A stretch of DNA of 64,000 bases, taken from IMG/VR virus record IMGVR_UViG_3300042308_001511, positions 280,084-344,083 of that record. One strand, 5' to 3'. Below are positions 4,554-62,831 of this stretch, piece after piece (position 1 is the stretch's first letter; every line of letters begins with the position of its first letter). The notes under the pieces are model-generated. The model had not been told where the DNA came from and did no database searches. It saw nothing but the letters and a program-made list of their open reading frames with translations. The translations under genes were made by a program, and so were the position numbers.

Positions 4554-4562
4554 TAATATATA
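4554..4562 (+). promoter_or_regulatory. putative late promoter TAATATATA
   Basis: Same 9-mer upstream of genes at 5797, 7295(-), 7378, 12621, 18562, 27086, 30945, 61772(-). Confidence 0.65.
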
Positions 4563-4579
4563 CAAAAAAGAAGATATTT

Positions 4580-5461
4580 ATGAAGTACATAAAGACTTAC
4601 GAAGTGCTGAAGGAGGCCAAGCTTCCCAGAAGGAGGTTCATACTACTGTCAGGCCCCAGCGCCTCTGGTAAGTCAACACTGGCAAAGAACCTAGGTGCCA
4701 CTCACTGGTACGATAAGATGTCCCAGGCGGTACTGATTGGCACCGACGACTTTATGAATAGAAAGGCCTTCGGGGTTATGAAAAGTCTTTGTAAGGCTGC
4801 GGGAATGCCTTTACTGGCCGCTATGATGAAGGACTGGCCGCACGTATTCGACCAATACAAAAAAGACTTCACAAAGTGGCGCAAGACGGCATCAACCGAG
4901 GAGCAGTCAATCTTCGACGACCTACATAAGAGGTTCCCTATCGATAAGGCGAAGGACAACGCTCCACACTTCCACCAAGACGGAAGGATCACAGGGATGG
5001 CCTGGTGTGCTGCACTTCTACCTAAGGAGTGTAAGACCATATTGTTCGACGACATATCTGTTGGTATAAAGAAGTACTTCGATGTTGATGAGTGGATCCT
5101 GTTCACACCATTTGACTGGTTGCTTAAGAACATAACCGACAGGAACTCAGATAAGGATAAGAGTGTTCATATAGACGTGAACTCGGAGGGTACCGCTATA
5201 TACCAGTACTGCCAATGGTGGCAGGCGTCTGCTGAGGCGGATCTCGACAACAAGATGTACACGGCGGATTCTGTTAGGACGATGCTGTCTGCGGCAGGTC
5301 ATAATGATCCAGATGAGGTTCTTTCGCTACTGGGTGTTAAGGGTCTTGATAACGGGTTCTATCTTACGACCAGGGACTGGATCGACGCGGGTTCGAGGAT
5401 TGTGAACACCAGGGATGTTTCTACCGGTAGGGCCGGGGATTTGCCGGGTGGCTTAAAATAA
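4580..5461 (+). CDS. P-loop nucleotide/small-molecule kinase-like protein with N-terminal MKYIKTYE tag
   Basis: Walker A GPSASGKS, IGTDD and ILFDD motifs. Confidence 0.7.
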   Translation: MKYIKTYEVLKEAKLPRRRFILLSGPSASGKSTLAKNLGATHWYDKMSQAVLIGTDDFMNRKAFGVMKSLCKAAGMPLLAAMMKDWPHVFDQYKKDFTKWRKTASTEEQSIFDDLHKRFPIDKAKDNAPHFHQDGRITGMAWCAALLPKECKTILFDDISVGIKKYFDVDEWILFTPFDWLLKNITDRNSDKDKSVHIDVNSEGTAIYQYCQWWQASAEADLDNKMYTADSVRTMLSAAGHNDPDEVLSLLGVKGLDNGFYLTTRDWIDAGSRIVNTRDVSTGRAGDLPGGLK

Positions 5462-5478
5462 CATGGACTTTATGAAAC

Positions 5479-5684
5479 TTACATTCCCAATTCCTTAAGT
5501 TTATCTTCTCTGAGCTCTTCTACGGTTCTGAAGTTTTTCCGATCCAGATAAGACCATCTATCACTATCATTTTTGACTAAAATCAAATCCGGAGACATTC
5601 CATAGTCGTTTGCATCGTACCACTTGCCGACGTGACTGACAGGCGTTCTAATATTGATTGATTACTTACACAAATGACCTTCAT
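5479..5684 (-). pseudogene. frameshifted family-B small protein with C-tag
   Basis: MKVICVSNQSILERLSVT in one frame continues as VGKWYDAND...REDKLKELGM* in another; 206 nt, one base short. Confidence 0.75.
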
Positions 5685-5706
5685 ACTATTGTTATTCTCA
5701 TAGGAA

Positions 5707-5738
5707 CAAATATAGCGATTAAAAAGAAAGGTGCCAAA
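5707..5738 (-). promoter_or_regulatory. Bacteroidota-type housekeeping promoter (-33 TTTG, 20 nt, -7 TATATTTG)
   Basis: Minus strand TTTG-gcacctttctttttaatcgc-TATATTTG, 23 nt before ATG 5684. Confidence 0.75.
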
Positions 5739-5782
5739 AAATACGAGTTTTTTGGCAACTCATCATACTGGGTTCCGGTAAA

Positions 5783-5791
5783 TAATATATA
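5783..5791 (+). promoter_or_regulatory. putative late promoter TAATATATA
   Basis: 5 nt before ATG 5797. Confidence 0.65.
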
Positions 5792-5796
5792 CCCTT

Positions 5797-6441
5797 ATGA
5801 GACTACTGAAGACATTCGAGGGATTCCACCTGGACGAGACAACACAGTTGATAACACACCTCTGCGAGGAACTGGGAGTTGACATAACATCCAGTGAAGA
5901 GATTGAGAGTGCGACAATATACACAACCGACTATTCTGAGTTGTCCGAACTAGAGATTGCTACGATACTAGAAGACCACATACCTATGCTGGGTGAGGGT
6001 AAAAGGATCGCGATGGCAATCGACCGGCTTAAGCCGATGAGGATATTCGTCTACGAGGGTAACCTGATTGATGTGATATTCTCCTACCTAGACTCAAGGC
6101 TCGGTGACATGGAGGTTGAGACCAACAAGAACAGGTGGGGTGAAGACACAATCGTGTACACAAAGGGTGGTTCGTGGTACTTCTGGCACTTCAAAGACGA
6201 CAGTGAGCTGAAGATATCCTACCAGAACGAGAACATACTCAACGAGATTGGATTGAAGAGCAAGCTAATAATGCCCAAAGTGGATCTCGAAGGGTTCATC
6301 GATTACATATCTGGGAACCACTACGAGCGGGGTGAGAAGATTACCGCGAACATATCGGCGGGATCCGTGAAACGTATGAACGTGGTGCATGAGTGGTTCT
6401 CCTCCAGGTTCGAGAAGTTCGACTACGTGGACTTCGTATAA
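5797..6441 (+). CDS. acidic hypothetical protein with N-tag (MRLLKTFEGF)
   Basis: 214-aa ORF; N-terminal motif plus late box. Confidence 0.8.
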   Translation: MRLLKTFEGFHLDETTQLITHLCEELGVDITSSEEIESATIYTTDYSELSELEIATILEDHIPMLGEGKRIAMAIDRLKPMRIFVYEGNLIDVIFSYLDSRLGDMEVETNKNRWGEDTIVYTKGGSWYFWHFKDDSELKISYQNENILNEIGLKSKLIMPKVDLEGFIDYISGNHYERGEKITANISAGSVKRMNVVHEWFSSRFEKFDYVDFV

Positions 6442-6444
6442 GTT

Positions 6445-6699
6445 TTATAGACCAAGTTCCTTTAGCTTCATCTCGCGCCACTCTTCCTTTGAGACGAATC
6501 TCGACCTTAGATACTCGGTGTTGTGACCGAAGTTGTTGATGATCTCGACGAACTCGTCGAACAGGTTTTCTGCATAGTTTACTACCTCGTACTCCTTTCC
6601 GTAGGTCAAGCCCCCAGGGATATGGCCTCTGGATTTGTATCCTCTTTTTGTTGATTCGTTGTTGTCGTAAGGTTCTATACAGACGATTTTTTCACACAT
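6445..6699 (-). CDS. family-B small protein with C-tag
   Basis: VCI...LTYGKEYEV...REMKLKELGL. Confidence 0.85.
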   Translation of the reverse strand: MCEKIVCIEPYDNNESTKRGYKSRGHIPGGLTYGKEYEVVNYAENLFDEFVEIINNFGHNTEYLRSRFVSKEEWREMKLKELGL

Positions 6700-6726
6700 G
6701 CCGTAAATATACGATAAAGTATTAAA

Positions 6727-6753
6727 GAAAAAAGCACCTAAGGTGCCTTTTTT
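6727..6753. terminator. intrinsic terminator
   Basis: AAAAAAGCACC-TAA-GGTGCCTTTTT at end of 6753..7295. Confidence 0.65.
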
Positions 6754-7295
6754 TATCTCATTGATAGGACGAATACTATGTACTCTAATATCAAATCTTT
6801 CCTCCTGTGCTTGTACTCCCAGACGTCCTCCCCGGACTCTAACTCGTCATCTTCGTTAGTGAACTCGTCGAAGAAGGTGTCCGCGAAGTCCTCCTCCTCT
6901 GCGTCAGGATTAGAGGTGCCAAGTTCGTCTTTCAGAATATCCAAGCAGTCCCATAGTTCATCCTGATCGAGCATCTCGAGAAGTTCATCCTCGTCGTAGA
7001 AAATCACATATATCCTGTCGCTGGTACCGCCACCCTGTCCTACGGCGTAGTTCCAACCCTCGTCTTCGAGCATAGGTTTGAACCTGGTCTTAGTGTCTTT
7101 GTCAATGAACGGATTTTGACCATAAGGACCATAAGATGGTTTGTCTGCGTAGGACCATATACGAAACACGTTGTCTTTGGCGAGATTTATCCTCTCGGCA
7201 TCTTTGTCTTCCAGCATCGCAGTGGCTATCTGGTTGACCTGGTCCATTTTGTTATCCTGTCCGAACTCCTCGAACATCATCAGTCTTCTTCTCAT
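6753..7295 (-). CDS. acidic hypothetical protein with N-tag (MRRRLMMFEEF)
   Basis: 180 aa; TAATATATA on minus strand at 7300-7308. Confidence 0.8.
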   Translation of the reverse strand: MRRRLMMFEEFGQDNKMDQVNQIATAMLEDKDAERINLAKDNVFRIWSYADKPSYGPYGQNPFIDKDTKTRFKPMLEDEGWNYAVGQGGGTSDRIYVIFYDEDELLEMLDQDELWDCLDILKDELGTSNPDAEEEDFADTFFDEFTNEDDELESGEDVWEYKHRRKDLILEYIVFVLSMR

Positions 7296-7377
7296 GCTTT
7301 ATATATTAAAAGCATTATCCGTTTTCTTATTGTCTGTTGTGCCAGAATCCGGGAATGTTTGCGTTAATATATACTCT

Positions 7378-8172
7378 ATGAAGTACATTAGAACATACGG
7401 GATCTTCGAGTCGAAGAAGAAGGACGTGAAGGATTACATGGGCAAAGACAGGATCATACTGATAGGTCCACCTACGGTCGGAAAGTCGACCATATCCAAT
7501 GCACTCGCCAAGAGCCTGGGCCTCGAGGTCGTCTCTCTGGACAGGCTACAGGCTGAGTTCGGGTACGGAGAGGATTCCGAGCGCGAGTGCGTGGCCCACG
7601 TCCTGTCGGAGGACTACGAGGGCTTCGACAAGCCTTCGATACTCGACTTCGGTGGAGGGCACGTCTACAAGAAGGACGCTCACAAGCTGCTGAAGGGTTA
7701 CAGGAACATCTTCGTCCTTGTCCCTTCGGAGGACATTGAGTTCAGCAGGGAACTTCTGGAGAAGGGCCACGAGAGGAGGTTGCAGGTAGGTACTGACCGC
7801 GAGCTCAAGAAGGTCATGTCCGCCTACGAGAAGGGTTGGAAGGGAATGGACGAGGGCAAGGCCGAGAAGATGATTGAGTTGATAAAGAAGGTGCTGGAAG
7901 GCGGCGCTGGTAAGATAAAGGTCGAGGATCTACCGCCTAACATGAAGTCGGAGTTCACTGGCTCGTCCTTCTACAAGTCGCAGAAGCCAAAGTACTTCTG
8001 GGACGTCGAGTCAGGCTGGAGGAAGTACCAGGACCTTTTCACGAAGAGGCACGACAGGATAAACAGGTCCATAACGGACAACGTGGTTGAGGTCTACACT
8101 AAGAAGGGCGTCCGCAGGTCGAAGTCGGCCATAGTGAAGGAGATACTGGGTGGTCTGGTGAAATTCACTTAA
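7378..8172 (+). CDS. shikimate-kinase-like P-loop protein with N-tag (MKYIRTYGIFES)
   Basis: ILIGPPTVGKST, SLDRL, ILDFGGG motifs; start at 7378 after TAATATATA 7365-7373. Confidence 0.7.
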   Translation: MKYIRTYGIFESKKKDVKDYMGKDRIILIGPPTVGKSTISNALAKSLGLEVVSLDRLQAEFGYGEDSERECVAHVLSEDYEGFDKPSILDFGGGHVYKKDAHKLLKGYRNIFVLVPSEDIEFSRELLEKGHERRLQVGTDRELKKVMSAYEKGWKGMDEGKAEKMIELIKKVLEGGAGKIKVEDLPPNMKSEFTGSSFYKSQKPKYFWDVESGWRKYQDLFTKRHDRINRSITDNVVEVYTKKGVRRSKSAIVKEILGGLVKFT

Positions 8173-8219
8173 TAAGGGTGAAATTCACTTAAAATAAAAT
8201 TTGAGTGAAAAACACTTAA
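8157..8219. repeat. three copies of GTGAAA(TT/AA)CACTTAA
   Basis: Exact 16-bp copies at 8157-8172 and 8177-8192; 13/15 match at 8205-8219. Confidence 0.85.
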
Positions 8220-8436
8220 TATTTTAGAACCATATGAGGTTGTATGAATGGTGATTCTTCTTTGCAATTGAATTCGAATTCTACGTTGATTTCCGGTATT
8301 ACGCCTTTCACGATACCCTCAACGCCAATGAACTTCTCCATTTGAGAGTTCCAGTGTACGCCAAAATACCGGGAGAAGGTGGTACTTGATGAGGTCTCAA
8401 ACCTGAAACCCTTCGCCTGTCTCCTACTTTTATCAT
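8216..8436 (-). pseudogene. frameshifted and truncated family-A protein
   Basis: Coupled ATG at 8436 gives MIKVGDR; AKGFRF continues in another frame (one base missing); C-tag absent. Confidence 0.7.
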
Positions 8437-9622: not shown

Positions 9623-9629
9623 CTTTCTA

Positions 9630-9875: not shown

Positions 9876-9937
9876 GGCAGTTTATGTATTAAAATTTTAT
9901 TTGATCTCGACTTATCTCGCTCAGAGCAATGCCACAA

Positions 9938-10554: not shown

Positions 10555-10555
10555 A

Positions 10556-10849: not shown

Positions 10850-10850
10850 C

Positions 10851-11230: not shown

Positions 11231-11248
11231 GTAAAAACTTACGGGAAT

Positions 11249-12620: not shown

Positions 12621-13055
12621 ATGAGATACATAAAGCTTTACGAGGATTTCTCCGCATCGGATTTGGACCAGGTGATGATGTCCATCTGCGACGACATGTC
12701 GTTTAGTCTCTACTACGAGGGTAATCTGTCCAGGGTCTACACGGTCGATGGGCGGGTTGACGACACCGACCTGTCCAGGTGGAAGGACTACCTCGGTAGC
12801 GAGTGGACCATACTTGTGAACACACTTGTCAATAATAGCTGCGTGACGTTTGTTAGGGGAGACGAGGGTGTTTTCCCTGCGGTAAAAGAGATGTTGATGA
12901 AGTTATGGCCAACGAAGAGGTCGATAGATTACAATGGATTTGGTGGTGTTGATACGAACTGGTTCAGGATCAGGAGAGATCTGATATGGTACTTCGATCT
13001 CAGCTCGTCACAGGCAAGAACTTTGTTGAAGGATCACTACGAAGAGGCAGAGTGA
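12621..13055 (+). CDS. N-tag protein (MRYIKLYEDF), paralog of 19224..19856
   Basis: Shared DQVMMSIC[DE]DMSF; TAATATATA at 12605-12613. Confidence 0.85.
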   Translation: MRYIKLYEDFSASDLDQVMMSICDDMSFSLYYEGNLSRVYTVDGRVDDTDLSRWKDYLGSEWTILVNTLVNNSCVTFVRGDEGVFPAVKEMLMKLWPTKRSIDYNGFGGVDTNWFRIRRDLIWYFDLSSSQARTLLKDHYEEAE

Positions 13056-16578: not shown

Positions 16579-17289
16579 TTAGAATAAGTTTAAGTATTGA
16601 GTTATTTCTTTTATCTCTTCAGGGTCAAAGGCACTTAGTAGTTCATCACCTTGTATTTCTTCCAAACTTTTCCCTTCTTTAGCGAGTTCTTCTATGTAGT
16701 CCGCTGCTGACTTTTTATTGGTCTCGTAGAATGCGAGGTGTTCAGTTGTTGGATACTTATCGATTGTACCGTCGTATACTTCTATGGTGAAGTAAACACC
16801 ATCTAAGTCGTTAAAGAGTTTCCTACTTTTCAACCAGTGATCTATGTTCTTTAGTCCGTGGAATGCTTGGCCCCATATGAACTTTACATCCGGTCTTGGG
16901 TTTTCTTTGTAGTAGTATTTAAGCATGTGTCCAATACCTTTTTCTTTATGGTCTGGATGCACAAATAAAGAAACACCTTCTATACCTGTAGAGTCGTCAC
17001 CTTCAAAGTCGTAGAAGTTACCGATTATGACTGGGAGCTTTGTTTTTTTGAGTATATACCCACCTACAATTTCACCGTTTATTTCTGCTACAATTGAAAC
17101 TGAATAATCAAGTTTATTGATAGAGTATTGGTCGTGTTTTTCTTTGGTCTTTGGATCTGCTAAGTCGCCCCAGAATTTACCAAAGTATTGGAACTTAATA
17201 TCCATACAGGTTCTCACATCGGCTTCAGTCATTGGTCTTATCGTTATGCCTTTGTTTAGAAATCCTTCGTATGTTTTCAGTATTTTCAT
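16579..17289 (-). CDS. GNAT N-acetyltransferase with N-tag (MKILKTYEGFL)
   Basis: IRPMTEADV, LFVHPDHKEKGIGHML acetyl-CoA motif; TATAAATA at 17301-17308 (-). Confidence 0.8.
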   Translation of the reverse strand: MKILKTYEGFLNKGITIRPMTEADVRTCMDIKFQYFGKFWGDLADPKTKEKHDQYSINKLDYSVSIVAEINGEIVGGYILKKTKLPVIIGNFYDFEGDDSTGIEGVSLFVHPDHKEKGIGHMLKYYYKENPRPDVKFIWGQAFHGLKNIDHWLKSRKLFNDLDGVYFTIEVYDGTIDKYPTTEHLAFYETNKKSAADYIEELAKEGKSLEEIQGDELLSAFDPEEIKEITQYLNLF

Positions 17290-18561: not shown

Positions 18562-19227
18562 ATGAAAATTAGAATGTTTGAGAATTGGTCACAAGACTTC
18601 GTGACAGATTTCACCGACAACGGTTTCGATGTTGATGTGAATGAATATACTATCAACGGACAGTATAAGGGTAAGTTCGTGGTTACACAGGTTTCCAGGT
18701 GGTTCGACGATATGTTGGGTAAGATAGATACCGAGTACAATATAATGAGGACTAAGACATTCTTTAATTCGATTACAGGGAATGCCAACTTCGAGGTTGT
18801 TGTTGCACCTCCTACGAGTGGAAACTCGATTGAGTTTATGTTGGATGGTGTCAAGCATGAGTTCTATATAAAATATGTCAGGTGTTTCGGTAGCGGATCT
18901 GAAATAGGCCTTGCGTTTGTGGGTAACCGTGGTGATGGAGATTCTGGAACGATTTATATCAGTGTAGTTGAGAGTCCTGTGAGGAAGACGAAGAAGATCC
19001 GTTTTGGTTACAACAACAGGACCAAAAACGTTCTTGTGTCGATGGATGTAGTGGGTAAGCTACTGGAACTAATCATCTCAGATAAATTAGAGGTAGGTGA
19101 TTATGGTGAGAGAAAGAAGTATAGTGAGTTAACTAATGAAGAGCTAATTATTCGTAAATTTGATGGTGGGATGACCAAGCAGAAGTTCGATTTACATATA
19201 GATGCAATAAAGAGTGTAGTGAGATGA
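18562..19227 (+). CDS. N-tag protein (MKIRMFENW)
   Basis: 221 aa; TAATATATA at 18548-18556. Confidence 0.8.
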   Translation: MKIRMFENWSQDFVTDFTDNGFDVDVNEYTINGQYKGKFVVTQVSRWFDDMLGKIDTEYNIMRTKTFFNSITGNANFEVVVAPPTSGNSIEFMLDGVKHEFYIKYVRCFGSGSEIGLAFVGNRGDGDSGTIYISVVESPVRKTKKIRFGYNNRTKNVLVSMDVVGKLLELIISDKLEVGDYGERKKYSELTNEELIIRKFDGGMTKQKFDLHIDAIKSVVR

Positions 19228-19856
19228 GGTACATAAAACTATATGAAGAGTTCTCCAAGAACGAGTTCGACCAGGTGATGATGTCAATCTGTGAGGATAT
19301 GTCCTTCGAGGTCTACGAAGATTTCCCTTCTACTGAGGATGTAAGGGTCTACTTGGTGGACGGTTTACCTAACATAGATCGTTCTAGGTATGAAGAGTAT
19401 TTGGGTGATGATTGGCATATTATTTCGAAAGAGTACAGGTATCTCGATAAGTGTATGGTTAGTTTCGTGAAGGGTGAGCCTAGTGATGCAGCTCTTAAGT
19501 GGTTGGAGGATGTGTATGGTGACCTGAGACGAGAAGAGGAGCATCTTCCTTCGACTGAATGGGGAGCTTATGGTGAGAAGGCGGGTATTTCCTACAACTA
19601 CATTGATGGTACTGGTAGGAAGATACTATCATTCGTTGTGCGTGATGTTTTAAATCAATCGATGGATCCGTTCGATATGGAATCTTCGGGTGGTACGAAA
19701 GTATATTTCAACACTGATGTGCGTGACTTCCTACGAGCTTGTTTCGGTCTGTCGGATTTATTTGCACATATTCTAAGAGATATAGTAAATATTTGGATTA
19801 AGGATGTGTATGGTATAAACGGTCATGTCTATCTTCTTCCTCCTAATAACAGGTAG
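19224..19856 (+). CDS. N-tag protein (MRYIKLYEEF)
   Basis: ATGA-coupled; paralog of 12621..13055. Confidence 0.85.
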   Translation: MRYIKLYEEFSKNEFDQVMMSICEDMSFEVYEDFPSTEDVRVYLVDGLPNIDRSRYEEYLGDDWHIISKEYRYLDKCMVSFVKGEPSDAALKWLEDVYGDLRREEEHLPSTEWGAYGEKAGISYNYIDGTGRKILSFVVRDVLNQSMDPFDMESSGGTKVYFNTDVRDFLRACFGLSDLFAHILRDIVNIWIKDVYGINGHVYLLPPNNR

Positions 19857-26945: not shown

Positions 26946-27085
26946 ATCCCTATTACTTTTACGTGCGACTTTATATCCATTGGTGTTCCTGCTGTTTTAT
27001 TTTCCGAATATAAGTAAATAATATGTAACTGACAAATTATAGTTATTTTATTTTTAATATATAAGATATAAAAAAAATATTTATA

Positions 27086-28258
27086 ATGGCAACATTTACC
27101 ACATCAAAAACTTCTGGAAGTATATATGTATCTGTTAATACAACAACGGGTTATTGGATGAGTTTCCATAATGGAAGTTATAATGGAAATTCAAACACCC
27201 CACAGATATATAGTGATTCTGGTACCTTCAATTATTGGGGTAAAAGATTGGATGTAATTGCAACAAATGGTGAATTTACAATTGTCGCGTGTGATGTTAA
27301 TGGAAACATTGGTGGTGATATAACTTTGTTGAATTTATATTCTAGTTCTGATATAATTGCGTTTGACGGAACTGGTTTGACCGCTTTGACTAAATTGAGT
27401 ATAGAGGGTGCATCGAATATTAGAGGTCAGCTAACATCTTTTGATGCGACTGGTATGACTTCATTGAATTGGTTATACTTAAGGAGTAATTTACTAACAA
27501 ATATAAACGTAACTGGTTTAGTAAATCTAACTAAGTTAGTGTTGGATGGTAATCAATTAACTTGGGGAGGTATAAGTGGTTTAAATACTTTGAGTAGTTT
27601 AACTTGGTTAAACTTAAATGGTAACTTATTAACTACATTTGATGGTTCAGGTTTGAGCTCGTTATTACAACTTGATTTGTTCTACAATCAGGTAACAACA
27701 TCTGGAATAACTAATTTACCAAATACATTGGTTAAATTGAATTTACGTTATAATAGACTTACATCATTTGATGCTACTAGTTTAGTAAACTTAACTGAAC
27801 TTAGTTTACAGATGAATCAAATAACATCTGTAAATTTATCTGGCCTAACAAAATTGATTTTACTTAATTTATCTGATAATTTATTGACAGATATAAATGT
27901 TTCTGGATTGACTAGTTTGAAATATATAAATCTTACTGGTAATCGTTTATCTACAATGGATGTAAGTGGTCTAACTAATTTAGTTGATTTGAGATTATGG
28001 CGTAATTCGTCTATAACACCTAGTGTTAACAATCAGATATTACAACAATTGGATCAAAATGGTGCTATTGGTGATACTTCTACTAGTAAGGGTTACTTTC
28101 CAGCAAATGGTGTTTTTTGGTCTAATAATGGTAGAACTTCTGTTAGTAATGTAAGTTTCAATAATTTGACGAATAAAAATTGGGAATTTGATGGTTTGGA
28201 TTTGATTGCGAGTCCAACTCGTCAGTTATCGGGCACTAAGGACAGAAAAAACTTATAA
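27086..28258 (+). CDS. leucine-rich repeat protein (internalin-like)
   Basis: About 10 repeats LxLxxNxLTxxDxSGLTxL; TAATATATA at 27055-27063. Confidence 0.9.
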   Translation: MATFTTSKTSGSIYVSVNTTTGYWMSFHNGSYNGNSNTPQIYSDSGTFNYWGKRLDVIATNGEFTIVACDVNGNIGGDITLLNLYSSSDIIAFDGTGLTALTKLSIEGASNIRGQLTSFDATGMTSLNWLYLRSNLLTNINVTGLVNLTKLVLDGNQLTWGGISGLNTLSSLTWLNLNGNLLTTFDGSGLSSLLQLDLFYNQVTTSGITNLPNTLVKLNLRYNRLTSFDATSLVNLTELSLQMNQITSVNLSGLTKLILLNLSDNLLTDINVSGLTSLKYINLTGNRLSTMDVSGLTNLVDLRLWRNSSITPSVNNQILQQLDQNGAIGDTSTSKGYFPANGVFWSNNGRTSVSNVSFNNLTNKNWEFDGLDLIASPTRQLSGTKDRKNL

Positions 28259-30944: not shown

Positions 30945-31154
30945 ATGATAAAATTGAAGAAGTTTGAGGAGTTGGATTACGAACAGCTTAGAGACCAAAC
31001 GAATAGAGACTTCCACGGAAGTAAATCAGATACTGTTGAATATCCGGATGTTAGGAATATGAATAGGGATGAGTTGAAGGACTATCTTGAAACTATTGGT
31101 GTTCCATCAAACATACTCGATGAAACTGTGGATAATATACTTAGTGCACTATAA
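30945..31154 (+). CDS. small N-tag protein (MIKLKKFEEL)
   Basis: TAATATATA at 30911-30919. Confidence 0.75.
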   Translation: MIKLKKFEELDYEQLRDQTNRDFHGSKSDTVEYPDVRNMNRDELKDYLETIGVPSNILDETVDNILSAL

Positions 31155-32705: not shown

Positions 32706-33215
32706 TTATTCACTATAAAGGTGATGTGTCTCCGCTACGAGGTAGTCCATCAGAATAATGCTTCTTTCTTGATCGTCTTTACAATTTTCCCACATATCTT
32801 CTCCGTCCACGTATTTTCCGGTCTCGTCGTCGTAGATTCCTGAGAAGTATTGGCTTGCATAGCCACCGTCTTCTTGGCCCAGTACAGATTGTACTTCGTA
32901 GACCGCTTCGTTGAGGTCATCTACGAGTATAGAGTTCCACCATTTGGTTTCGTACGCGACGCAGTACCTGGTTATATCTCTTCCGGTTGCCTCCCATTCT
33001 AGTCTTATTTCCCAGCCAATCTCACTCAGCAAATACTCACATCGTTTGAGGTCTATTCCTTCTTTGTTGTCCTCGTTTGAATATTGCCATATCCTCAGCT
33101 CGGTTCCCGGTATTTCGATCCTGTCGGGGCTTACTTCTATATCCTCGAACATAGAGATGATGATTTGTGTCACCTCGTCAAATCCGAACTCCTCGAACAT
33201 CTTTATCCTTCTCAT
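32706..33215 (-). CDS. acidic N-tag protein (MRRIKMFEEF)
   Basis: TATATATA at 33221-33228. Confidence 0.8.
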   Translation of the reverse strand: MRRIKMFEEFGFDEVTQIIISMFEDIEVSPDRIEIPGTELRIWQYSNEDNKEGIDLKRCEYLLSEIGWEIRLEWEATGRDITRYCVAYETKWWNSILVDDLNEAVYEVQSVLGQEDGGYASQYFSGIYDDETGKYVDGEDMWENCKDDQERSIILMDYLVAETHHLYSE

Positions 33216-51666: not shown

Positions 51667-52134
51667 TTAAAAGTAGTCGAAGTTTGATTTATAGTCGTAA
51701 GGATCCATCGTCTTAACATATATATCGGGCCAAAGTCTGTTGAGTTCGTCTATGCTTTCTTCGAGTAGATAGGTTGCCTCTATGTCCATCACCTCCATAT
51801 CGTCCTCGTCTATCATTGTGAGACAAACGCTGACCTCCGGTTCGCCTGCGGCATCTATCGCCTCCTGTATCTCATCATAGTTGTTGATGTCGAACGTGTA
51901 GTCCTCTGGTCTGGTCGAACTATCGAACGATGTGCTGAATATGTACTCGCTACCTCCGTGTTGACTCACCGGATTGTCCACGGTTGCCATAACCATGAGC
52001 GAACCTCCATTGTCGATACTATCGAGTGCTAAGTCGTAGACGTTTTGTATCGCACCCCGTATGTCACTTAGTACGTCGATAGCTTCCTTTCCCTGTGTGG
52101 ACTCGAACGCCTTCCAGCTCTTTATCTTTTTCAT
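51667..52134 (-). CDS. acidic N-tag protein (MKKIKSWKAFES)
   Basis: Coupled to and paralogous with 52131..52580. Confidence 0.8.
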   Translation of the reverse strand: MKKIKSWKAFESTQGKEAIDVLSDIRGAIQNVYDLALDSIDNGGSLMVMATVDNPVSQHGGSEYIFSTSFDSSTRPEDYTFDINNYDEIQEAIDAAGEPEVSVCLTMIDEDDMEVMDIEATYLLEESIDELNRLWPDIYVKTMDPYDYKSNFDYF

Positions 52135-52580
52135 CCTATCCATATCGTTATTCCTTTCCATTCCTCTTTCAACTCGTCTAGTGCTCTTTCTTGTAGTTCC
52201 TCGGTCTTTTCTTGGTCAAAGTTTATTTCTTTTCCAAACCTTGTGTTGGTGTTCTCGGTTAGTAGATAAAACCATACAGCAGGTTTCATTCCTTCTGAAA
52301 GAGCTTGCTCGACCCAATTGACACTATCATACTCAAATACGATGTCACGGTTTTCGTGGTTAATCATACCACTCGCGATTGATGTATTTGGCGTTTTCTC
52401 GTGATAGAGTCCTTCGTGTGGTGAAGGTATTGTCATTGAGTATCCAAGGTATCCATCTTCGTCAATGTGTTCGATGCTAAGCATAAAGACTTGGTTGGTC
52501 AGTTCTCTAAGATCACTCTCCATCTGTTCGAGAAGATTTTTATTGTTCTCAAACATCGCGTACGACTTTATTCTTTTCAT
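52131..52580 (-). CDS. acidic N-tag protein (MKRIKSYAMFEN)
   Basis: TATATATA at 52585-52592. Confidence 0.8.
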   Translation of the reverse strand: MKRIKSYAMFENNKNLLEQMESDLRELTNQVFMLSIEHIDEDGYLGYSMTIPSPHEGLYHEKTPNTSIASGMINHENRDIVFEYDSVNWVEQALSEGMKPAVWFYLLTENTNTRFGKEINFDQEKTEELQERALDELKEEWKGITIWIG

Positions 52581-53182: not shown

Positions 53183-54853
53183 ATGAAAAGATTAATGACG
53201 CGTCAACAATTCTTAAACGAAGCACACATTTACTTCGACGATTACCTGGTAGACACGCTGAGTGAGATAGACAACACGATAGCAAAGAGGCTTCTCGACC
53301 TACACAAGAAACAGCAAGACACGGATATCGCTTTCGCGATGCAGGGCAAGAAAGGTAAAGTCAATATAATAACTTATAAAAAAGCAGCAGAGACGCTACG
53401 TAAGAAGGAGGACGACGTTTTCATAAACGATGTGGCAGATGACGTAGAGGCAGACAAGCCACTCGACGACGACTGGCAGATAAAGTCTTTTAACTTCCTT
53501 AGAGACAATAAAGCAATGACCGCGACCAAAATATCGAGGCTTGTAAACACCCTCTTCCCTAAGGAGTACGAAGACACAGAAGGACAAAAGACACTAAGAG
53601 ACCTGATAGACAAATATGGTGCACTTACCGACGACACAATGAAGTTTGAGGTCGTGAAGGGTGAGGAGGTAAAGAAGTGGTATCTTGAAGACAACTACGA
53701 GACAACAAAGGGAGACCTCGGTGGAAGTTGTATGAGACACGACCGATGTCAGACCTACTTCGACATATACATCAAGAATCCGGACGTGGTCAGCATACTA
53801 ATTTGTCTCGGTGCGAAAGGAACGTTGATAGGAAGAGCACTCATCTGGAACCTGTCGGACAGCAATGATCCGTCGCAGCTGATGGACAGGATTTACTTCA
53901 GAGACGAGAGGGTCAAAGAAAAGTTCATAAGCTACGCAGAGGATAACGATATGGCCTACAAACCCGGAAGGGGTCTGACCAATATCGTCTGGCGTGGAGA
54001 GAGATTCAAAAAATCACCGAAGGTAAAACTCGAAGAGTGGGAGTTCGACGAATATCCGTATATGGACACATTCGCGAAGCTCGACATCGAGGACGGTACA
54101 CTATACAACTCAGAAGACAAGGCCGACGGCTTCTACATACTCACATCCACAGACGGTGGATACCACGAGAGAGAGATTGTCTGGTCAACCTACGAAGACC
54201 AGGAGATAGACGAAGAAGAGGCGGTGTGGAGCGAGCCAATACAGGATTGGGTAAGCAGGGAAAATTCCGTATACGTCAGCACGGACTACGACAGAACAAC
54301 AGGCGATTACCCTAAGGACCACCCGGACATCGTACACATACCGAACGAAGGATATTTTCATATCGACGATACACTATGGAGTGAGTGCATGGAACAAGCG
54401 ATACTCTACTCCGACGCGATAGAAATAGTAGGTCACATCGACGATATGGAGGCAGACTCGTTTGGACACGAGATTGACTATGTCGATAGATCGAAAAAAC
54501 TCGTAATCTGGCGGGATATGCTCTGTGCGAACTGGCTGAGGTACCTAATAGACAATGATATCTGGGACGAGAAGCCGTTCCTCGACGACGACGTGGTAAA
54601 GGTAGAGAACGGAAAGTACTACCTAGTCGACTGGTCAATCGTCGCTTACGAGACCGAGAAGGGGCAGCTTTCATTCAAGCATTGTCAGGTTCTCAACATT
54701 AACAACGATGGACTTAAAGAGGTTATGACTGACACGCCTAGTTACTACTGGAACTTGAAATCAGAGATAAAAAAAGAATTAATCTCGGCACTCAAAGGTA
54801 AAGATGATAAAGAGGTAGAGAAGATTGAGAAGTGGATACTAAATACCCAATAG
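53183..54853 (+). CDS. large acidic protein with N-tag-like start (MKRLMTRQQFLNE)
   Basis: 556 aa; GSCMRH...GRALIW...MDRIY core; TATATATA at 53170. Confidence 0.85.
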   Translation: MKRLMTRQQFLNEAHIYFDDYLVDTLSEIDNTIAKRLLDLHKKQQDTDIAFAMQGKKGKVNIITYKKAAETLRKKEDDVFINDVADDVEADKPLDDDWQIKSFNFLRDNKAMTATKISRLVNTLFPKEYEDTEGQKTLRDLIDKYGALTDDTMKFEVVKGEEVKKWYLEDNYETTKGDLGGSCMRHDRCQTYFDIYIKNPDVVSILICLGAKGTLIGRALIWNLSDSNDPSQLMDRIYFRDERVKEKFISYAEDNDMAYKPGRGLTNIVWRGERFKKSPKVKLEEWEFDEYPYMDTFAKLDIEDGTLYNSEDKADGFYILTSTDGGYHEREIVWSTYEDQEIDEEEAVWSEPIQDWVSRENSVYVSTDYDRTTGDYPKDHPDIVHIPNEGYFHIDDTLWSECMEQAILYSDAIEIVGHIDDMEADSFGHEIDYVDRSKKLVIWRDMLCANWLRYLIDNDIWDEKPFLDDDVVKVENGKYYLVDWSIVAYETEKGQLSFKHCQVLNINNDGLKEVMTDTPSYYWNLKSEIKKELISALKGKDDKEVEKIEKWILNTQ

Positions 54854-60817: not shown

Positions 60818-60860
60818 ATTATTTTTTTTTTTTTTTATTTATCGAATGAACGATATTTTA

Positions 60861-61772
60861 TTATTCATAAGCACTTGATGTAGTATCGTATTCAATCACG
60901 AATCTGAATTTGAGGTCAGGTATATTACCATAATTTGCGTAAGAAAGTGGCCACATTTGAAATGATATGTAAGATGTATAATACTTTTCAACTGGTGTAT
61001 TTTGTGGTATTCTCCAACTTCCACTATATGGATATGGAACGGTTCCAAGAGACTTATTACCAATGAGTGTACCTTCTAATTTATAAGTAGTAGAATCCAA
61101 ACTAACTTCTTCCGAGAATGTTACCTTTTCTCCCCATATTGTTCCTGGATCTCCTATATTTGCCGATGTGTATATTGAACCTGCGGTGGCTGCTGTTCCT
61201 GCAACTATATTATTTAGTTGAAATTGCGTCAGAGGATTTAAAACATTTCCTGGACCATTTGTAATGAATTCACCAACATTTGATGTTGTTGGGTCCTGAT
61301 CCAAATCATAGTTTATATTATAGTAGTTGTATCCGCCCATACCTTGAATTCTTACTTGTGTATTGGATAAGTTTCCTTTATAAATTATGTTTGTGTATAC
61401 TTTTATTTTACGTATTGCAAACCATGGTGTTATTGGTCGAAATGCTATAATTGACCATTGGTCTGGGTTGTATCCACCTACTACGAAACCAGGAGTTTTT
61501 TGAATTGCTGGTAAGTTTTTACCATTGTAAAATAATGAGGTACTGTAATATCCTTTTATCACACCATAATTTTCTTGGTTAGCGGCAACGACTATAGGAT
61601 TGAATCCGGATCCTCCTGTTCCTGAATCTATTGATAGACTCATTACACCACTATCGTATTGACCATATGATGTTGGAATTGGCCAATCGGTTGTTGGGTT
61701 TTTGTGTGGTTTAATCCCTGATATAGGTTTACCCCAAAGATTGTACCATTTACTTCTGTCGATAGGTGGCAT
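60861..61772 (-). CDS. putative virion-associated protein sharing N-terminal peptide with 59087..60817
   Basis: IDRSKWYN[ML]WG..I.GIKP.KNP; G/T/N-rich; TAATATATA at 61821-61829 (-). Confidence 0.65.
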   Translation of the reverse strand: MPPIDRSKWYNLWGKPISGIKPHKNPTTDWPIPTSYGQYDSGVMSLSIDSGTGGSGFNPIVVAANQENYGVIKGYYSTSLFYNGKNLPAIQKTPGFVVGGYNPDQWSIIAFRPITPWFAIRKIKVYTNIIYKGNLSNTQVRIQGMGGYNYYNINYDLDQDPTTSNVGEFITNGPGNVLNPLTQFQLNNIVAGTAATAGSIYTSANIGDPGTIWGEKVTFSEEVSLDSTTYKLEGTLIGNKSLGTVPYPYSGSWRIPQNTPVEKYYTSYISFQMWPLSYANYGNIPDLKFRFVIEYDTTSSAYE

Positions 61773-61870
61773 ATTTTCATTTTGTTTTTTTTTATCGATA
61801 AAACGATAAGCTTTTTTTTCTATATATTAATTTATAGGTATGAATAATTTGTACTTCTGAGTTTCTGATA

Positions 61871-61878
61871 TATAAATA
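61871..61878 (+). promoter_or_regulatory. TATAAATA late-promoter-like box
   Basis: Identical to the T4 late promoter consensus, 15 nt before endolysin ATG. Confidence 0.6.
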
Positions 61879-61893
61879 AAATAATTTTGAGTT

Positions 61894-62616
61894 ATGATTT
61901 TGAAATTAGGATCAAAAGGTGATGACGTCAAAAGACTTCAGGAGAAGTTGGGACTTGGAATGGACGGCACTTTCGGTGTTGTTACTGAGAAAGCTGTAAA
62001 GGATTGGCAATCAAAGAACGGACTTGTTTCGGATGGTATTGTAGGAGATTCTACGTGGGGTAAATTGTTCGGTACTAATGTAGAGGTCGATGCTAATGCA
62101 CCATTAGCATTTATTAGCAAATTGAAAGGGCACATACCTGATGCAGTTTTTTCACAACTTCCTACAACGTGTGCTGCTTATAACATAATTACACCACTTA
62201 GACTTGCACACTTTATGGCACAATGTGCTCACGAATCTGGAAACTTTGTTTGGACAACAGAATTGGCAACTGGTAAGGCATATGAGGGTAGAAAAGATTT
62301 AGGTAATATACAACCGGGTGATGGTGTTAGGTTTAAGGGAAGAGGTTATATACAACTAACAGGAAGAGCCAATTATGAAAAGTTTTCTAAGTTCTGTGGT
62401 GAGGATTGTGTTACTAACCCAGAGTTAGTTGCAACTAAATACCCAATGTTATCTGCTGCTTACTTTTTTCAGAAGACTAAACTTTGGGACATTTGTGATC
62501 AAGGTTCTGATGAAACGGTTGTTACGAAGGTTTCTAAAAGGGTAAATGGTGGAACGAATGGATTAGAAGACAGGAAAAAGAAGTTCAAAAACTTCTGGTC
62601 TATATTATCAAAGTAA
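61894..62616 (+). CDS. endolysin: peptidoglycan-binding domain plus GH19 lysozyme
   Basis: LKLGSKGDDVKRLQ...DGIVGDST; RLAHFMAQCAHESG, FKGRGYIQLTGRANY, VNGGTNGLEDR. Confidence 0.9.
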   Translation: MILKLGSKGDDVKRLQEKLGLGMDGTFGVVTEKAVKDWQSKNGLVSDGIVGDSTWGKLFGTNVEVDANAPLAFISKLKGHIPDAVFSQLPTTCAAYNIITPLRLAHFMAQCAHESGNFVWTTELATGKAYEGRKDLGNIQPGDGVRFKGRGYIQLTGRANYEKFSKFCGEDCVTNPELVATKYPMLSAAYFFQKTKLWDICDQGSDETVVTKVSKRVNGGTNGLEDRKKKFKNFWSILSK

Positions 62617-62627
62617 TTATAATTGAT

Positions 62628-62831
62628 ATGAAAATAAAGTTATTTGAGAAATTCAATTCGAAAAAGAAGAAGACTTTCAATATAGAAGATTGTCCATCTT
62701 TCGGTGAGTTCAGTAAGTTATTGACTGATTTGAAAAAGTTGGCAGAAAAAGTTAGAAAAGAGATGCCACATGGTACTAAAAGTGATTTAGATGACTATAT
62801 TGAGAATAGAATTTTCGGTAGAGATGTATAA
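62628..62831 (+). CDS. small N-tag protein (MKIKLFEKF)
   Basis: Downstream of endolysin in same orientation. Confidence 0.75.
   Translation: MKIKLFEKFNSKKKKTFNIEDCPSFGEFSKLLTDLKKLAEKVRKEMPHGTKSDLDDYIENRIFGRDV

What the first reader, a model, noticed from the sequence alone, without database searches (positions are those of the whole stretch)
4554..62831. Second address system: T4-CTS-like N-terminal tag coupled to a late-promoter box (candidate packaged and injected proteins)
Seen: about 14 ORFs start M[KR]x[IL]Kx[FY]E[EDG]F or close variants (4580, 5797, 7295-, 7378, 12621, 17289-, 18562, 19224, 30945, 33215-, 52134-, 52580-, 53183, 62628). Eleven have TAATATATA, TATATATA or TATAAATA within about 5-30 nt upstream; the other three directly follow a gene that does. 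Established: T4 internal proteins IPI-III share an N-terminal capsid targeting sequence (MKT[YF]xEF..., cleaved after Glu by the prohead protease), and T4 late promoters are TATAAATA. Inference: these are internal head proteins injected with the DNA. The set includes enzymes (two P-loop kinases, a GNAT) and several acidic proteins, a possible pre-loaded host-takeover or anti-defence payload scattered as late islands among early genes.
Basis: partly seen in the sequence, partly recalled or inferred. Interest (0 to 1): 0.82.

Follow-up and report, generated by a model that had tools for sequence, protein, structure and literature searches.

The report
Late-promoter N-terminal address tag in megaphage
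About one gene in ten in this piece of a giant lake phage starts with the same ten-residue peptide and sits behind the promoter that drives the capsid genes. The layout closely mirrors the tag phage T4 uses to load proteins into its head, so these may be proteins packed in the virion and injected with the DNA, but packaging is untested.

Summary
Thirteen ORFs start with M-[KR]-x-[IL]-K-x-[FY]-E-x-[FY] or a one-residue variant. A fourteenth (53183) carries a related form, ..QQFLNE. Eleven have a TAATATATA, TATATATA or TATAAATA box upstream, eight of them only 4-5 nt before the ATG. The other three follow such a gene in an operon.

The tag is selected at the peptide level and sits on unrelated bodies (P-loop kinases, GNAT; ankyrin, LRR, SET, ATP-grasp in relatives). 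AlphaFold2 predicts it as a free N-terminal extension of the GNAT.

The system is not local. It occurs across uncultured 'Mahaphage'-type megaphages of Bacteroidetes: 310 distinct tagged ORFs in about 1.8 Mb examined.

In these relatives the same box precedes the major capsid gene (61 of 74 loci), and in the complete relative also portal, sheath, terminase and protease-scaffold. That relative encodes a gp55-like late sigma factor. Its head module is T4-type (Gp23, Gp20, gp21-like protease).

The tag core K-T-[FY]-E-x-F aligns with the T4 capsid targeting sequence MKT[YF]xEF.

The capsid-cargo reading is therefore the best hypothesis (about 0.45), but packaging, cleavage and injection are untested, and most tags lack a T4-type L/I-x-E cleavage site.

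The parts
4580..5461 (+). Tagged ORF, 293 aa, MKYIKTYEVL..; P-loop NTPase or kinase-like body
   Evidence: The P-loop follows the tag at about residue 20. Box at 4554-4562, 17 nt before the ATG.
4554..4562 (+). TAATATATA box of gene 4580
   Evidence: In other lake strains contigs diverge just upstream of it, at 4497-4553.
5797..6441 (+). Tagged ORF, 214 aa, MRLLKTFEGF..; acidic paralogue family
   Evidence: Box at 5783-5791, 5 nt before the ATG.
6753..7295 (-). Tagged ORF, 180 aa, MRRRLMMFEEF.. (one-residue insertion variant); acidic paralogue family
   Evidence: Box at 7300-7308 (-), 4 nt before the ATG.
7378..8172 (+). Tagged ORF, 264 aa, MKYIRTYGIFES.. (two-residue insertion subtype); P-loop kinase-like
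   Evidence: SKI 1.9e-5 and AAA families. Box at 7365-7373, 4 nt before the ATG.
12621..13055 (+). Tagged ORF, 144 aa, MRYIKLYEDF..; acidic paralogue family
   Evidence: Box TAATATATATAA at 12605-12616.
16579..17289 (-). Tagged ORF, 236 aa, MKILKTYEGF..; GNAT acetyltransferase; a peptidase C39 gene (15895-16578) follows in the same operon
   Evidence: Most orthologues keep the tag, and the linker varies. In the AlphaFold2 model residues 1-12 have pLDDT below 50 and the fold starts at residue 15. Boxes AAATATATAC and TATAAATA at 17301-17320 (-).
18562..19227 (+). Tagged ORF, 221 aa, MKIRMFENW.. (one-residue deletion variant)
   Evidence: Box at 18548-18556, 5 nt before the ATG.
19224..19856 (+). 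Tagged ORF, 210 aa, MRYIKLYEEF..; operon-internal, no box of its own
   Evidence: Its ATG overlaps the stop of gene 18562.
30945..31154 (+). Tagged ORF, 69 aa, MIKLKKFEEL.. (variant)
   Evidence: Box at 30911-30919, 25 nt before the ATG.
32706..33215 (-). Tagged ORF, 169 aa, MRRIKMFEEF..; acidic paralogue family
   Evidence: Boxes at 33220-33228 (-) and 33238-33246 (-).
52131..52580 (-). Tagged ORF, 149 aa, MKRIKSYAMFEN..; heads an operon with 52134- and two LamG-domain proteins (50242-51663, 49519-50226)
   Evidence: The palindromic box at 52585-52592 is shared with the divergent gene 52612-52935.
51667..52134 (-). Tagged ORF, 155 aa, MKKIKSWKAFES..; operon-internal
   Evidence: The start at 52134 overlaps the stop of the preceding tagged gene. 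The longest ORF starts upstream, at 52161.
53183..54853 (+). ORF, 556 aa, MKRLMTRQQFLNE..; does not fit the main tag but fits the T4-like 'type C' form (..F-[IL]-x-E)
   Evidence: Box at 53170-53177, 5 nt before the ATG. It is the only one of the 14 with a TM-like segment.
62628..62831 (+). Tagged ORF, 67 aa, MKIKLFEKF.. (variant); follows the endolysin gene
61868..62616 (+). Box ATATATAAATA (contains TATAAATA) followed by the untagged endolysin gene 61894-62616 (PG_binding_1 + GH19)
   Evidence: A typical late gene behind the same box, inside the window.
27055..28258 (+). TAATATATA box and an untagged LRR protein (390 aa): a boxed gene without the tag

Best explanation
SHOWN
- The window comes from an uncultured megaphage of Bacteroidetes. 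A 98%-identical orthologue lies on a 660,742-bp contig. The relatives are the 'Mahaphage' genomes of 634-735 kb.
- Genes in the window are read from two promoter classes. One is a host-like TAnnTTTG class, which heads long operons of small genes. The other is a phage-specific T(A/T)TATATA box, one base away from the T4 late promoter TATAAATA.
- In relatives this box precedes the capsid, portal, sheath, terminase and protease-scaffold genes. A gp55-like late sigma factor is encoded.
- A subset of boxed genes encodes soluble proteins that share only a ten-residue N-terminal peptide: M-K-[YH]-[LI]-K-x-[FY]-E-x-[FY]. Many of them have the box just 4-6 nt from the ATG, so their mRNAs are probably leaderless.
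- The peptide is conserved as amino acids, not as DNA. It is appended through a variable linker to unrelated folds. AlphaFold2 predicts it as a free, unpacked extension.

INFERRED (about 0.45)
- The peptide is a capsid (prohead-core) targeting tag that works like the T4 CTS MKT[YF]xEF. Its two aromatic residues, spaced Ar-x-x-Ar, correspond to the T4 CTS residues 4 and 7 that are needed for targeting.
- These residues would dock the cargo onto the scaffold part of the gp21-like protease-scaffold protein while the Gp23-type shell assembles. That scaffold carries about 10 tandem repeats of KNIxYSEY[LIV]AENLD, a similar aromatic-acidic motif.
- Cargo whose tag continues with [ILV]-x-E would be clipped by the protease, as in T4. 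Most cargo would keep the tag.
- The cargo would leave with the DNA and act before any phage gene is expressed. It includes kinase-like, GNAT, SET, ankyrin and LRR proteins, small acidic proteins, and in a relative an RNA ligase and a 2H-phosphoesterase/exonuclease.
For: Tag is real and non-random.

Selection acts on the peptide:
- Synonymous codons vary in the window.
- Codon choice inside 310 tags matches that in the protein bodies.
- The same peptide is kept in genomes of 22-39% GC.

The tag is modular:
- With the first 12 residues removed, the 310 tagged ORFs fall into 212 clusters, 179 of them singletons.
- Bodies match P-loop, GNAT, Ank, LRR, SET and ATP-grasp families.
- GNAT orthologues keep the tag at 55-70% identity while the linker varies.
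- In the AlphaFold2 model residues 1-12 are disordered and the fold begins at residue 15.

Cargo is soluble: TM-like segments occur in 1.9% of tagged proteins against 8.5% of controls, p = 2e-5.

The tag is not a by-product of leaderless initiation:
- Tag frequency is 9.2% in leaderless and 8.3% in leadered boxed genes.
- Three window tags are operon-internal.
- Leaderless early genes are untagged.

The promoter is late:
- A box lies upstream of the capsid gene in 61 of 74 loci, including 42-46% GC lineages.
- A box lies upstream of portal, capsid, sheath, terminase, neck and protease-scaffold genes in LR745206.1.
- A gp55-like sigma factor matches phrog_234 at 1.9e-7.
- The endolysin in the window lies behind ATATATAAATA.

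The head is T4-type: Pfam Gp23 at 1.8e-26, Portal_T4 at 2.7e-57, head maturation protease phrog_207 at 4e-30. In a pairwise comparison with T4 gp21 the NRNxRxY, GExxHP and SSR motifs are conserved.

Cleavage specificity inferred as L/I-x-E: 29 such sites in the 707-aa protease-scaffold protein, one in every repeat.

Match to the T4 CTS:
- T4 ipI, ipII and ipIII begin MKTFKEF and MKTYQEFIAE (PMC8442874).
- Targeting depends on residues 4 and 7, processing on residues 8 and 10 (PMC9026906).
- 19 N-termini of the form M.KKY.[QE]F[IL].E occur in LR745206.1, against 0.5 expected.
- In tags with an aromatic at position 10, [ILV]11 and E13 co-occur 16 times against 6 expected, p = 4e-6, for example MKRIKLFEQFIAE.
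Against: - There is no direct evidence that any tagged protein is in a virion, is cleaved, or is injected.
- No member of the clade is cultured. The nearest cultured relative examined, Tenacibaculum phage PTm1, has a similar protease-scaffold and capsid pair but no tags and almost no boxes.
- Most tags lack an L/I-x-E site. Such sites are no more common after the tag than in controls: 0.33 against 0.30.
- Sixty main-type and 19 type-C tags in the 936 genes of LR745206.1 (about 8%), and 14 of about 139 in the window, is far more cargo species than any known phage head carries.
- The box also precedes some replication and recombination genes (UvsX-like, helicase, gyrase), so it may be 'middle plus late' rather than strictly late.
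- Late timing is inferred from gene content, not measured. No RNA run was listed.
- The similarity to the T4 CTS involves 4-6 residues, too short for a statistical claim of homology.
Confidence: 0.45

Rival explanations
1. The tag is a genuine peptide address, but for another partner or place that exists late in infection. Candidates are a phage-built compartment or assembly factory, a hub or chaperone protein, the tail or baseplate, or a protease or unfoldase that times the proteins' turnover. Capsid loading is not involved.
For: - All the evidence that the tag is a modular, peptide-level, free N-terminal extension on soluble proteins fits equally well.
- The very large number of tagged species, about 8-10% of genes, is easier to reconcile with a cytoplasmic sorting or regulatory system than with head cargo.
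- Most tags have no protease site.
- A peptidase C39 gene sits directly behind the tagged GNAT gene, an arrangement kept in the 660-kb relative.
- The ten residues form an amphipathic pattern, like the encapsulation peptides of bacterial microcompartments (my own knowledge, not tested).
Against: - No compartment or hub gene was identified.
- The register match to the T4 CTS, the T4-type head module, and the aromatic-acidic repeats in the scaffold are unexplained coincidences under this reading.
- The C39 leader consensus (double glycine) is absent from the tags.
Confidence: 0.25
2. The conserved N-terminus is an expression feature rather than an address. The first ten codons, or the nascent peptide, would be what lets ribosomes start and clear the 5' end of leaderless or short-leader late mRNAs in a host that does not use Shine-Dalgarno pairing.
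For: - The box lies only 4-6 nt from the ATG in 8 of the 11 boxed window genes, and in 67 genes of LR745206.1.
- Lys (AAA) at codon 2 and A/U-rich codons dominate the tag.
- Codon 6 ends in A in more than 80% of tags, a nucleotide-level bias.
Against: - Synonymous usage otherwise equals that of the protein bodies.
- In the 39% GC window the tag is written with AAG, TAC, CTG, TTC and GAG.
- Tag frequency is the same in leaderless and leadered boxed genes.
- Three window tags are operon-internal.
- Leaderless early genes and the highly expressed late structural genes lack the tag.
- Conservation reaches residue 10 with defined aromatic positions, beyond the three to five codons my own knowledge suggests are known to affect early elongation.
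Confidence: 0.1
3. The shared promoter and first ten codons are a mobile cassette end. The conserved DNA would serve as a recombination joint through which new genes are swapped in. The peptide would be a tolerated passenger with no function of its own, or all tagged genes would descend from one expanded family.
For: - Five window members (5797, 7295-, 12621, 19224, 33215-) are clear paralogues that share about 30 N-terminal residues.
- In other lake strains contigs break away just upstream of the box of gene 4580.
- Tagged genes are scattered as single-gene cassettes, and hairpins lie between some neighbouring cassettes.
Against: - DNA identity across tags is low because synonymous codons vary, which is poor substrate for homologous exchange.
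- Bodies belong to unrelated Pfam families and to 212 clusters.
- Amino-acid conservation across 22-39% GC genomes shows purifying selection on the peptide itself.
Confidence: 0.1

Closest known systems
[quoted passage not shown]
   Same: - About ten residues at the extreme N-terminus, shared by otherwise unrelated proteins.
- The core K-T-[YF]-x-x-F is shared. T4 has MKTFKEF and MKTYQEFIAE. This clade has ..K-T-[FY]-E-x-F.
- The two aromatic positions correspond to the T4 residues 4 and 7 needed for targeting (PMC9026906).
- The phage has Gp23-type capsid, Gp20-type portal and gp21-type protease genes.
- A subclass continues with [ILV]-x-E in the T4 register.
   Different: - Three extra residues (MK[YH][LI]) precede the core.
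- Most copies lack the L/I-x-E cleavage site.
- Tens of cargo species per genome, against three to a handful in T4.
- Many genes are probably leaderless, whereas T4 ip genes have a Shine-Dalgarno leader.
- Packaging has not been shown.
T4-type late promoter (TATAAATA) read by the gp55 sigma factor
   Same: - An A/T-only 8-bp element, one base different (TATATATA).
- The exact TATAAATA occurs upstream of 17289- and of the endolysin gene.
- The element precedes head and tail genes at a similar distance, 26-37 nt upstream of the capsid gene. In T4 it lies about 28 nt upstream of genes 22 and 24.
- A gp55-like protein is encoded in the relative.
   Different: - The consensus differs by one base and usually extends to TAATATATA(C/G/A).
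- There is a second spacing class, 4-6 nt from the ATG.
- The host is a Bacteroidetes with a different RNA polymerase and sigma-A.
- Dependence on gp55, gp33 or the sliding clamp, and the timing, were not tested.
Ejection and inner-body proteins of phiKZ-like giant phages (phiKZ, 201phi2-1, SPN3US)
   Same: Giant phages that load many different proteins into the head and process them with a gp21-like protease that cuts after Glu. N-terminal propeptides are thought to target the proteins. Paralogues have conserved N-termini (PMC5694885, PMC9026906).
   Different: Their propeptides are mostly longer than 100 residues and are removed at S/A-x-E. The tag here is 10 residues and usually has no such site. 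The head lineage and host phylum are also different.
Cargo-loading peptides of encapsulins and encapsulation peptides of bacterial microcompartments
   Same: Short terminal peptides, joined by a flexible linker, that are sufficient to address unrelated enzymes into a protein shell. Encapsulin shells share the HK97 fold. This comparison rests on my own knowledge.
   Different: Those are cellular compartments. Encapsulin tags are usually C-terminal and have a different consensus. No homology is proposed.

Membership tests
T4-type capsid targeting sequence (CTS) | Short (about 10 aa) peptide at the extreme N-terminus, shared by otherwise unrelated proteins | tested here: met
   Logo of 310 tags: information is confined to residues 1-10. 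212 clusters remain after removing the first 12 residues. Bodies fall in different Pfam families.
T4-type capsid targeting sequence (CTS) | Hydrophobic or aromatic residues at fixed spacing that are needed for targeting (T4 residues 4 and 7: Y/F..F) | tested here: met
   [FY]7 in 308 of 310 tags (required by the search pattern) and [FY]10 in 147 of 310 (not required), spaced Ar-x-x-Ar. The core K-T-[FY]-E-x-F matches T4 K-T-[YF]-x-E-F (PMC9026906). This shows a resemblance of pattern, not function.
T4-type capsid targeting sequence (CTS) | L/I-x-E protease site at the end of the tag, so that the tag is removed | tested here: not met
   No enrichment of [LI].E after the tag: 0.33 against 0.30 in controls. 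Only a subclass has it in register: 16 of the 153 tags with an aromatic at position 10, plus the 19 type-C N-termini in LR745206.1. In the window only 53183 has it in the exact register.
T4-type capsid targeting sequence (CTS) | The phage builds a T4-type prohead: Gp23 shell, Gp20 portal, gp21 protease, scaffolding core | tested here: met
   Met in relatives, not in the window's own genome. Pfam Gp23 at 1.8e-26. Portal_T4 at 2.7e-57. phrog_207 head maturation protease at 4e-30. Pairwise comparison with T4 gp21 gives E = 3e-4 with the catalytic motifs conserved. Scaffold repeats in 63 of 80 loci.
T4-type capsid targeting sequence (CTS) | Tagged proteins are physically inside the capsid and enter the host with the DNA | not testable with these tools
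   No cultured member and no proteome. No paper contains the tag peptides.
T4-type late promoter | TATAAATA-like -10 element upstream of late (structural, lysis) genes | tested here: met
   Box upstream of the capsid gene in 61 of 74 loci. Box upstream of 12 of 14 structural genes in LR745206.1. Endolysin in the window. The consensus is TATATATA, one base away from T4.
T4-type late promoter | A gp55-family late sigma factor is encoded by the phage | tested here: met
   LR745206.1 189151-189516 matches phrog_234 'late sigma transcription factor' at 1.9e-7. It also gives a weak direct hit to T4 gp55, E = 0.32. None was found in the window itself.
T4-type late promoter | Transcription late in infection, dependent on replication and the sliding clamp | not testable with these tools
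   No RNA run was listed for this phage.
Leaderless mRNA | The transcript starts at the start codon or within a few nucleotides of it | tested here: inconclusive
   The spacing between box and ATG is bimodal: 4-6 nt (67 genes) and 17-29 nt. A -10-type element ending 4-6 nt before the ATG implies a start at or beside the ATG, but no 5'-end data exist.
Single expanded paralogue family (not a tag) | Similarity extends beyond the N-terminus through the proteins | tested here: not met
   Only 5 of the 14 window proteins share more than the tag. 179 of 212 clusters are singletons.

The most novel reading that the evidence does not exclude
Megaphages of this clade use a universal ten-residue loading tag that mimics a unit of their own repeat-built scaffold. 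With it they pre-load the head with roughly 80-100 different soluble effectors: kinases, acetyl- and methyltransferases, ankyrin and LRR binders, acidic candidate DNA mimics, and RNA-repair and nucleotide-degrading enzymes. About a tenth of the proteome would then be delivered as protein together with the DNA, forming a virion-borne takeover and anti-defence arsenal far larger than in any known phage. The tag would also be a ready-made handle for packaging foreign proteins.
Probability: 0.3. Interest if true: 0.9.

Novelty: new variant of a known kind. Interest (0 to 1): 0.75.

Why it matters
Huge phages carry hundreds of genes of unknown role, and nobody knows which products travel in the particle. 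A sequence-readable tag tied to the capsid promoter would give a genome-only way to list candidate virion cargo in thousands of uncultured megaphage genomes. More than 2,100 relatives of the capsid protein were found, and the phage occurs in many lake and river metagenomes.

It would extend the T4 internal-protein principle, in which diverse anti-defence proteins share only a targeting peptide, to another phylum of hosts and to a much larger scale. It suggests a concrete mechanism, docking on aromatic-acidic scaffold repeats. It would also offer a short tag for loading proteins into very large capsids.

Even if the destination turns out not to be the capsid, a peptide address shared by about 8-10% of a phage proteome appears to be a new organising principle. 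No paper in the searchable library contains the tag peptides.

Tried and rejected
- Megablast of 50242-54853, and tblastn of the 19224 protein, against the phage collection: no match.
- tRNA scan of the window: none.
- PHROGs and Pfam on the acidic paralogue family and on the 18562, 30945, 52134-, 52580- and 53183 proteins: no family. For 62628 only a DUF6859 match below its cut-off.
- ESM Atlas look-up of the 12621 protein: only unnamed viral clusters.
- My guess that the recurrent 204-aa tagged family (..LIIVDVQKSF..) is an isochorismatase: Pfam gave no hit, so I dropped the name.
- Cultured relative PTm1, fetched whole in the hope of annotated virion proteins carrying the tag: it has no tags at all.
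- Samples of 50 kb around the capsid genes of LR756500, LR756501, LR756504 and Lak-B1: 0-1 tags each. The structural region of the tag-rich LR745206.1 is equally poor, so this did not settle the phyletic range.
- Search for RNA runs to map transcript starts: none listed.
- DNA contigs of four lake runs laid on 4400-8400. Of the 40 differences shown (out of 283), only one falls in a tag codon, at 4607, giving L10M. This is too incomplete for a dN/dS statement.
- Attempt to reach the capsid gene of the window's own lineage, the 660,742-bp contig. It was not among the 120 listed capsid homologues or the 80 metagenome loci, so the late-promoter test rests on relatives.
- Sigma-70 and terminator consensus scan of 4400-20000: counts close to those of shuffles, not informative.
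- phmmer of the protease domain against PDB sequences: no protease hit. PHROGs and a pairwise BLAST later resolved it.
- Rejected: a DNA-level motif, a by-product of leaderless translation, and a single paralogue family. Reasons are given under the rival explanations.

Full report
**What the window is**

The 64-kb window has 38.8% GC, is 93% coding and holds about 139 genes, mostly on the minus strand. A protein with a type IX secretion sorting domain points to a Bacteroidetes phage. So do TAnnTTTG-type promoters without Shine-Dalgarno sequences.

- The endolysin (61894-62616) is 51% identical to one in LR745206.1, an uncultured phage of 634,780 bp.
- The tagged GNAT has a 98%-identical orthologue on a 660,742-bp JGI contig with conserved neighbours.
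- DNA of the window is found in many lake and river metagenomes.
- The window is therefore an accessory-gene region of a 'Mahaphage'-type megaphage.

**Check of the observation**

All 14 starts are real ATG-initiated ORFs.

- Nine fit a strict regular expression. Four are one-residue variants.
- 53183 fits a related form instead.
In eight genes the box ends only 4-5 nt before the ATG.
- The joint promoter-tag pattern is absent from 100 shuffles.
- The tag-box association has Fisher p = 1.3e-8.
- None of the 19 genes behind the second, host-like promoter class is tagged.

**Peptide or nucleotide?**

- In the window the same residues are written with AAA or AAG, TAC or TAT, TTC or TTT, GAA or GAG, and CTN or TTR.
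- Over 310 tags, synonymous usage equals that of the protein bodies. The one exception is a preference for A at the third base of codon 6.
- The peptide persists in genomes from 22 to 39% GC.
- Selection therefore acts on the amino-acid sequence.

**A clade-wide system**

- Almost every hit is a true ORF starting MK[YH][IL]K.[FY]E.[FY], with TAATATATA 3-5 nt upstream. Many lie on contigs of 200-508 kb.
- One recurrent tagged family is 69-70% identical in the complete genomes LR745206.1 and LR756502.1.
- I fetched LR745206.1 whole. It has 60 tagged ORFs among 936 crude gene calls.
- The logo is M K [YH] [LI] K [TLK] [FY] E [ENS] [FY]. Positions 3 and 10 are conserved although the search pattern did not require them. 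Nothing is conserved after residue 10.

**The tag is a module**

- Without the first 12 residues, the 310 proteins form 212 clusters, 179 of them singletons.
- Bodies include P-loop kinases, GNAT, ankyrin, LRR, SET and ATP-grasp.
- GNAT orthologues keep the tag while the linker to the first strand varies from 3 to 14 residues.
- In an AlphaFold2 model residues 1-12 have pLDDT below 50 and make no contacts. The fold starts at residue 15.
- Tagged proteins are depleted in TM-like segments: 1.9% against 8.5%.
- In LR745206.1 tag frequency is the same behind leaderless (9.2%) and leadered (8.3%) boxes, against 3.7% without a box.
- Three window tags are operon-internal, and leaderless early genes are untagged.
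- The tag is therefore not a by-product of leaderless initiation.

**The box is a late promoter of T4 type**

- In LR745206.1 TAATATATA occurs 191 times, 148 of them within 60 nt upstream of a gene start. The spacing is bimodal: 4-6 nt and 17-29 nt.
- The box or a close variant precedes these genes:
  - portal (Pfam Portal_T4);
  - major capsid protein (Pfam Gp23);
  - tail sheath and large terminase;
  - neck and head-completion proteins;
  - the protease-scaffold gene.
- That makes 12 of 14 structural genes, against 4 of 11 replication genes.
- In 74 metagenomic capsid loci, 61 have GGTTATATATAGAT 26-37 nt before the capsid ATG. These include lineages of 42-46% GC.
- LR745206.1 encodes a gp55-like late sigma factor.
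- The T4 promoters of genes 22 and 24, read here from the T4 record, are TTATAAATA.. at the same distance.
- In the window the endolysin has ATATATAAATA upstream, and gene 17289 has an exact TATAAATA.
It is passed in relatives only, because the window has no capsid gene.

**Comparison with the T4 CTS**

- T4 ipI, ipII and ipIII begin MKTFKEF.. and MKTYQEFIAE.. (PMC8442874).
- Targeting needs residues 4 and 7. Processing needs residues 8 and 10. gp21 cuts after L/I-x-E (PMC9026906).
- T4 internal proteins are a diverse set of defence-countering proteins that share only the CTS (PMC3012670).
- With a three-residue offset, the tag core K5-T6-[FY]7-E8-x9-[FY]10 matches K2-T3-[YF]4-x5-E6-F7.
- Among tags with an aromatic at position 10, [ILV]11 and E13 co-occur 16 times against 6 expected (p = 4e-6). 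One example is MKRIKLFEQFIAE.
- LR745206.1 has 19 further N-termini of the form M.KKY.[QE]F[IL].E, against 0.5 expected. Thirteen of them have the box.
- Their bodies include a T4-type RNA ligase and a 2H-phosphoesterase plus exonuclease, which also gives a weak Acb1 match below its cut-off.

**The protease-scaffold protein**

- The 707-aa protein encoded just upstream of the capsid gene is a gp21-like protease.
- It is fused to a scaffold with about 10 tandem repeats of KNIxYSEY[LIV]AENLD. The repeats are conserved in 63 of 80 loci.
- Each repeat carries an [LIV]-A-E site and an aromatic-acidic heptad (YSEYIAE) that resembles YQEFIAE.
- This suggests that cargo tags dock by imitating a scaffold unit. 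That step is inference.

**What argues against the capsid reading**

- Most tags have no L/I-x-E site, and none is enriched after the tag.
- The number of tagged species is very high.
- PTm1, a cultured relative with the same protease-scaffold and capsid arrangement, has no tags.
- The box also precedes some replication and recombination genes.
- There are no expression or virion data.
- I therefore put capsid targeting at about 0.45 and another late destination at 0.25. An expression feature and a cassette-joint or common-descent explanation get 0.1 each.

**Novelty**

No paper in the searchable library contains the tag peptides. Searches on huge phages and on the CTS turned up no paper describing such a tag. 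I rate the finding as a new variant of a known kind: a T4-style targeting tag and late promoter in a different phage clade, at a much larger scale.

Noticed in passing
window, e.g. 8639-9649(-), 26216-26945(-), 40381-41179(-), 46545-47038(-), 48972-49483(-): At least 31 of about 139 genes end in ..R[ED]xK[LI]xELGI, with the stop codon overlapping the next ATG (..GGnATATGA). Nearly all are small minus-strand ORFs in early-type operons. This could be a C-terminal peptide tag (presumably the scan's 'first address system') or an RNA-level translational-coupling signal.
   Followed up: partly
window 24719-25045(-), 25066-25617(-), 35014-35415(-), 49217-49483(-) and other operon heads: A second promoter class, CCTTATATT[CT][GA] (the Bacteroidetes TAnnTTTG type), heads the long small-gene operons. 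It also often lies only 4-7 nt from the ATG, so early mRNAs may be leaderless too. None of these genes is tagged.
   Followed up: partly
LR745206.1 198546-200669 (L134:8546-10666); loci L144-L223: The gp21-like protease is fused to a scaffold with about 10 tandem 14-residue repeats, KNIxYSEY[LIV]AENLD, conserved in 63 of 80 related loci. The capsid protein N-terminus has a strongly conserved WMSEYAEFH stretch (W, M, Y, A and H invariant in the alignment). Both resemble the T4 CTS heptad YQEFIAE.
   Followed up: partly
window 4497-4553: Contigs from other lake metagenomes match the window up to this point and then continue with unrelated sequence. One continuation is a terminator-like hairpin followed by TTTTTTATA. 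The break lies just upstream of the TAATATATA box of gene 4580, so tagged genes may be exchanged as promoter-bounded cassettes.
   Followed up: no
window 15895-16578(-): A peptidase C39 (papain-like, leader-peptide-processing family) gene follows the tagged GNAT gene in one operon. The pair is conserved on the 660,742-bp relative contig.
   Followed up: no
LR745206.1 448257-449573(-) and 470485-471747(+): Proteins with the T4-like 'type C' N-terminus include a fusion of a 2H phosphoesterase (which also gives a weak Acb1 match below its cut-off) to an RNase T-type exonuclease, and a T4 Rnl1-type RNA ligase. Both enzyme types are known from phage counter-defence.
   Followed up: no
window 1433-2722(-), 2813-4491(-), 22391-24137(-), 31186-31617(-): Several phage genes encode proteins with N-terminal signal peptides. 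One has a type IX secretion C-terminal sorting domain (Por_Secre_tail, 3.3e-7), so the phage seems to make proteins for export by the host T9SS.
   Followed up: no
window 59087-60817(-), 60861-61772(-), 49519-51663(-), 30221-30886(+): Two paralogues start MP(P)IDRSKWYN.WG; the 576-aa one gives a weak LRR_EndoS match, below its cut-off. There is a pair of LamG/concanavalin-like proteins downstream of two tagged genes. There is also a LOG/SLOG (lysine-decarboxylase-like) gene at 30221-30886.
   Followed up: no
tags in window, LR745206.1 and L001-L120: Codon 6 of the tag ends in A in more than 80% of cases: ACA is 81% of Thr codons there, against 45% in the protein bodies. It is the only clear nucleotide-level bias inside the tag.
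   Followed up: no
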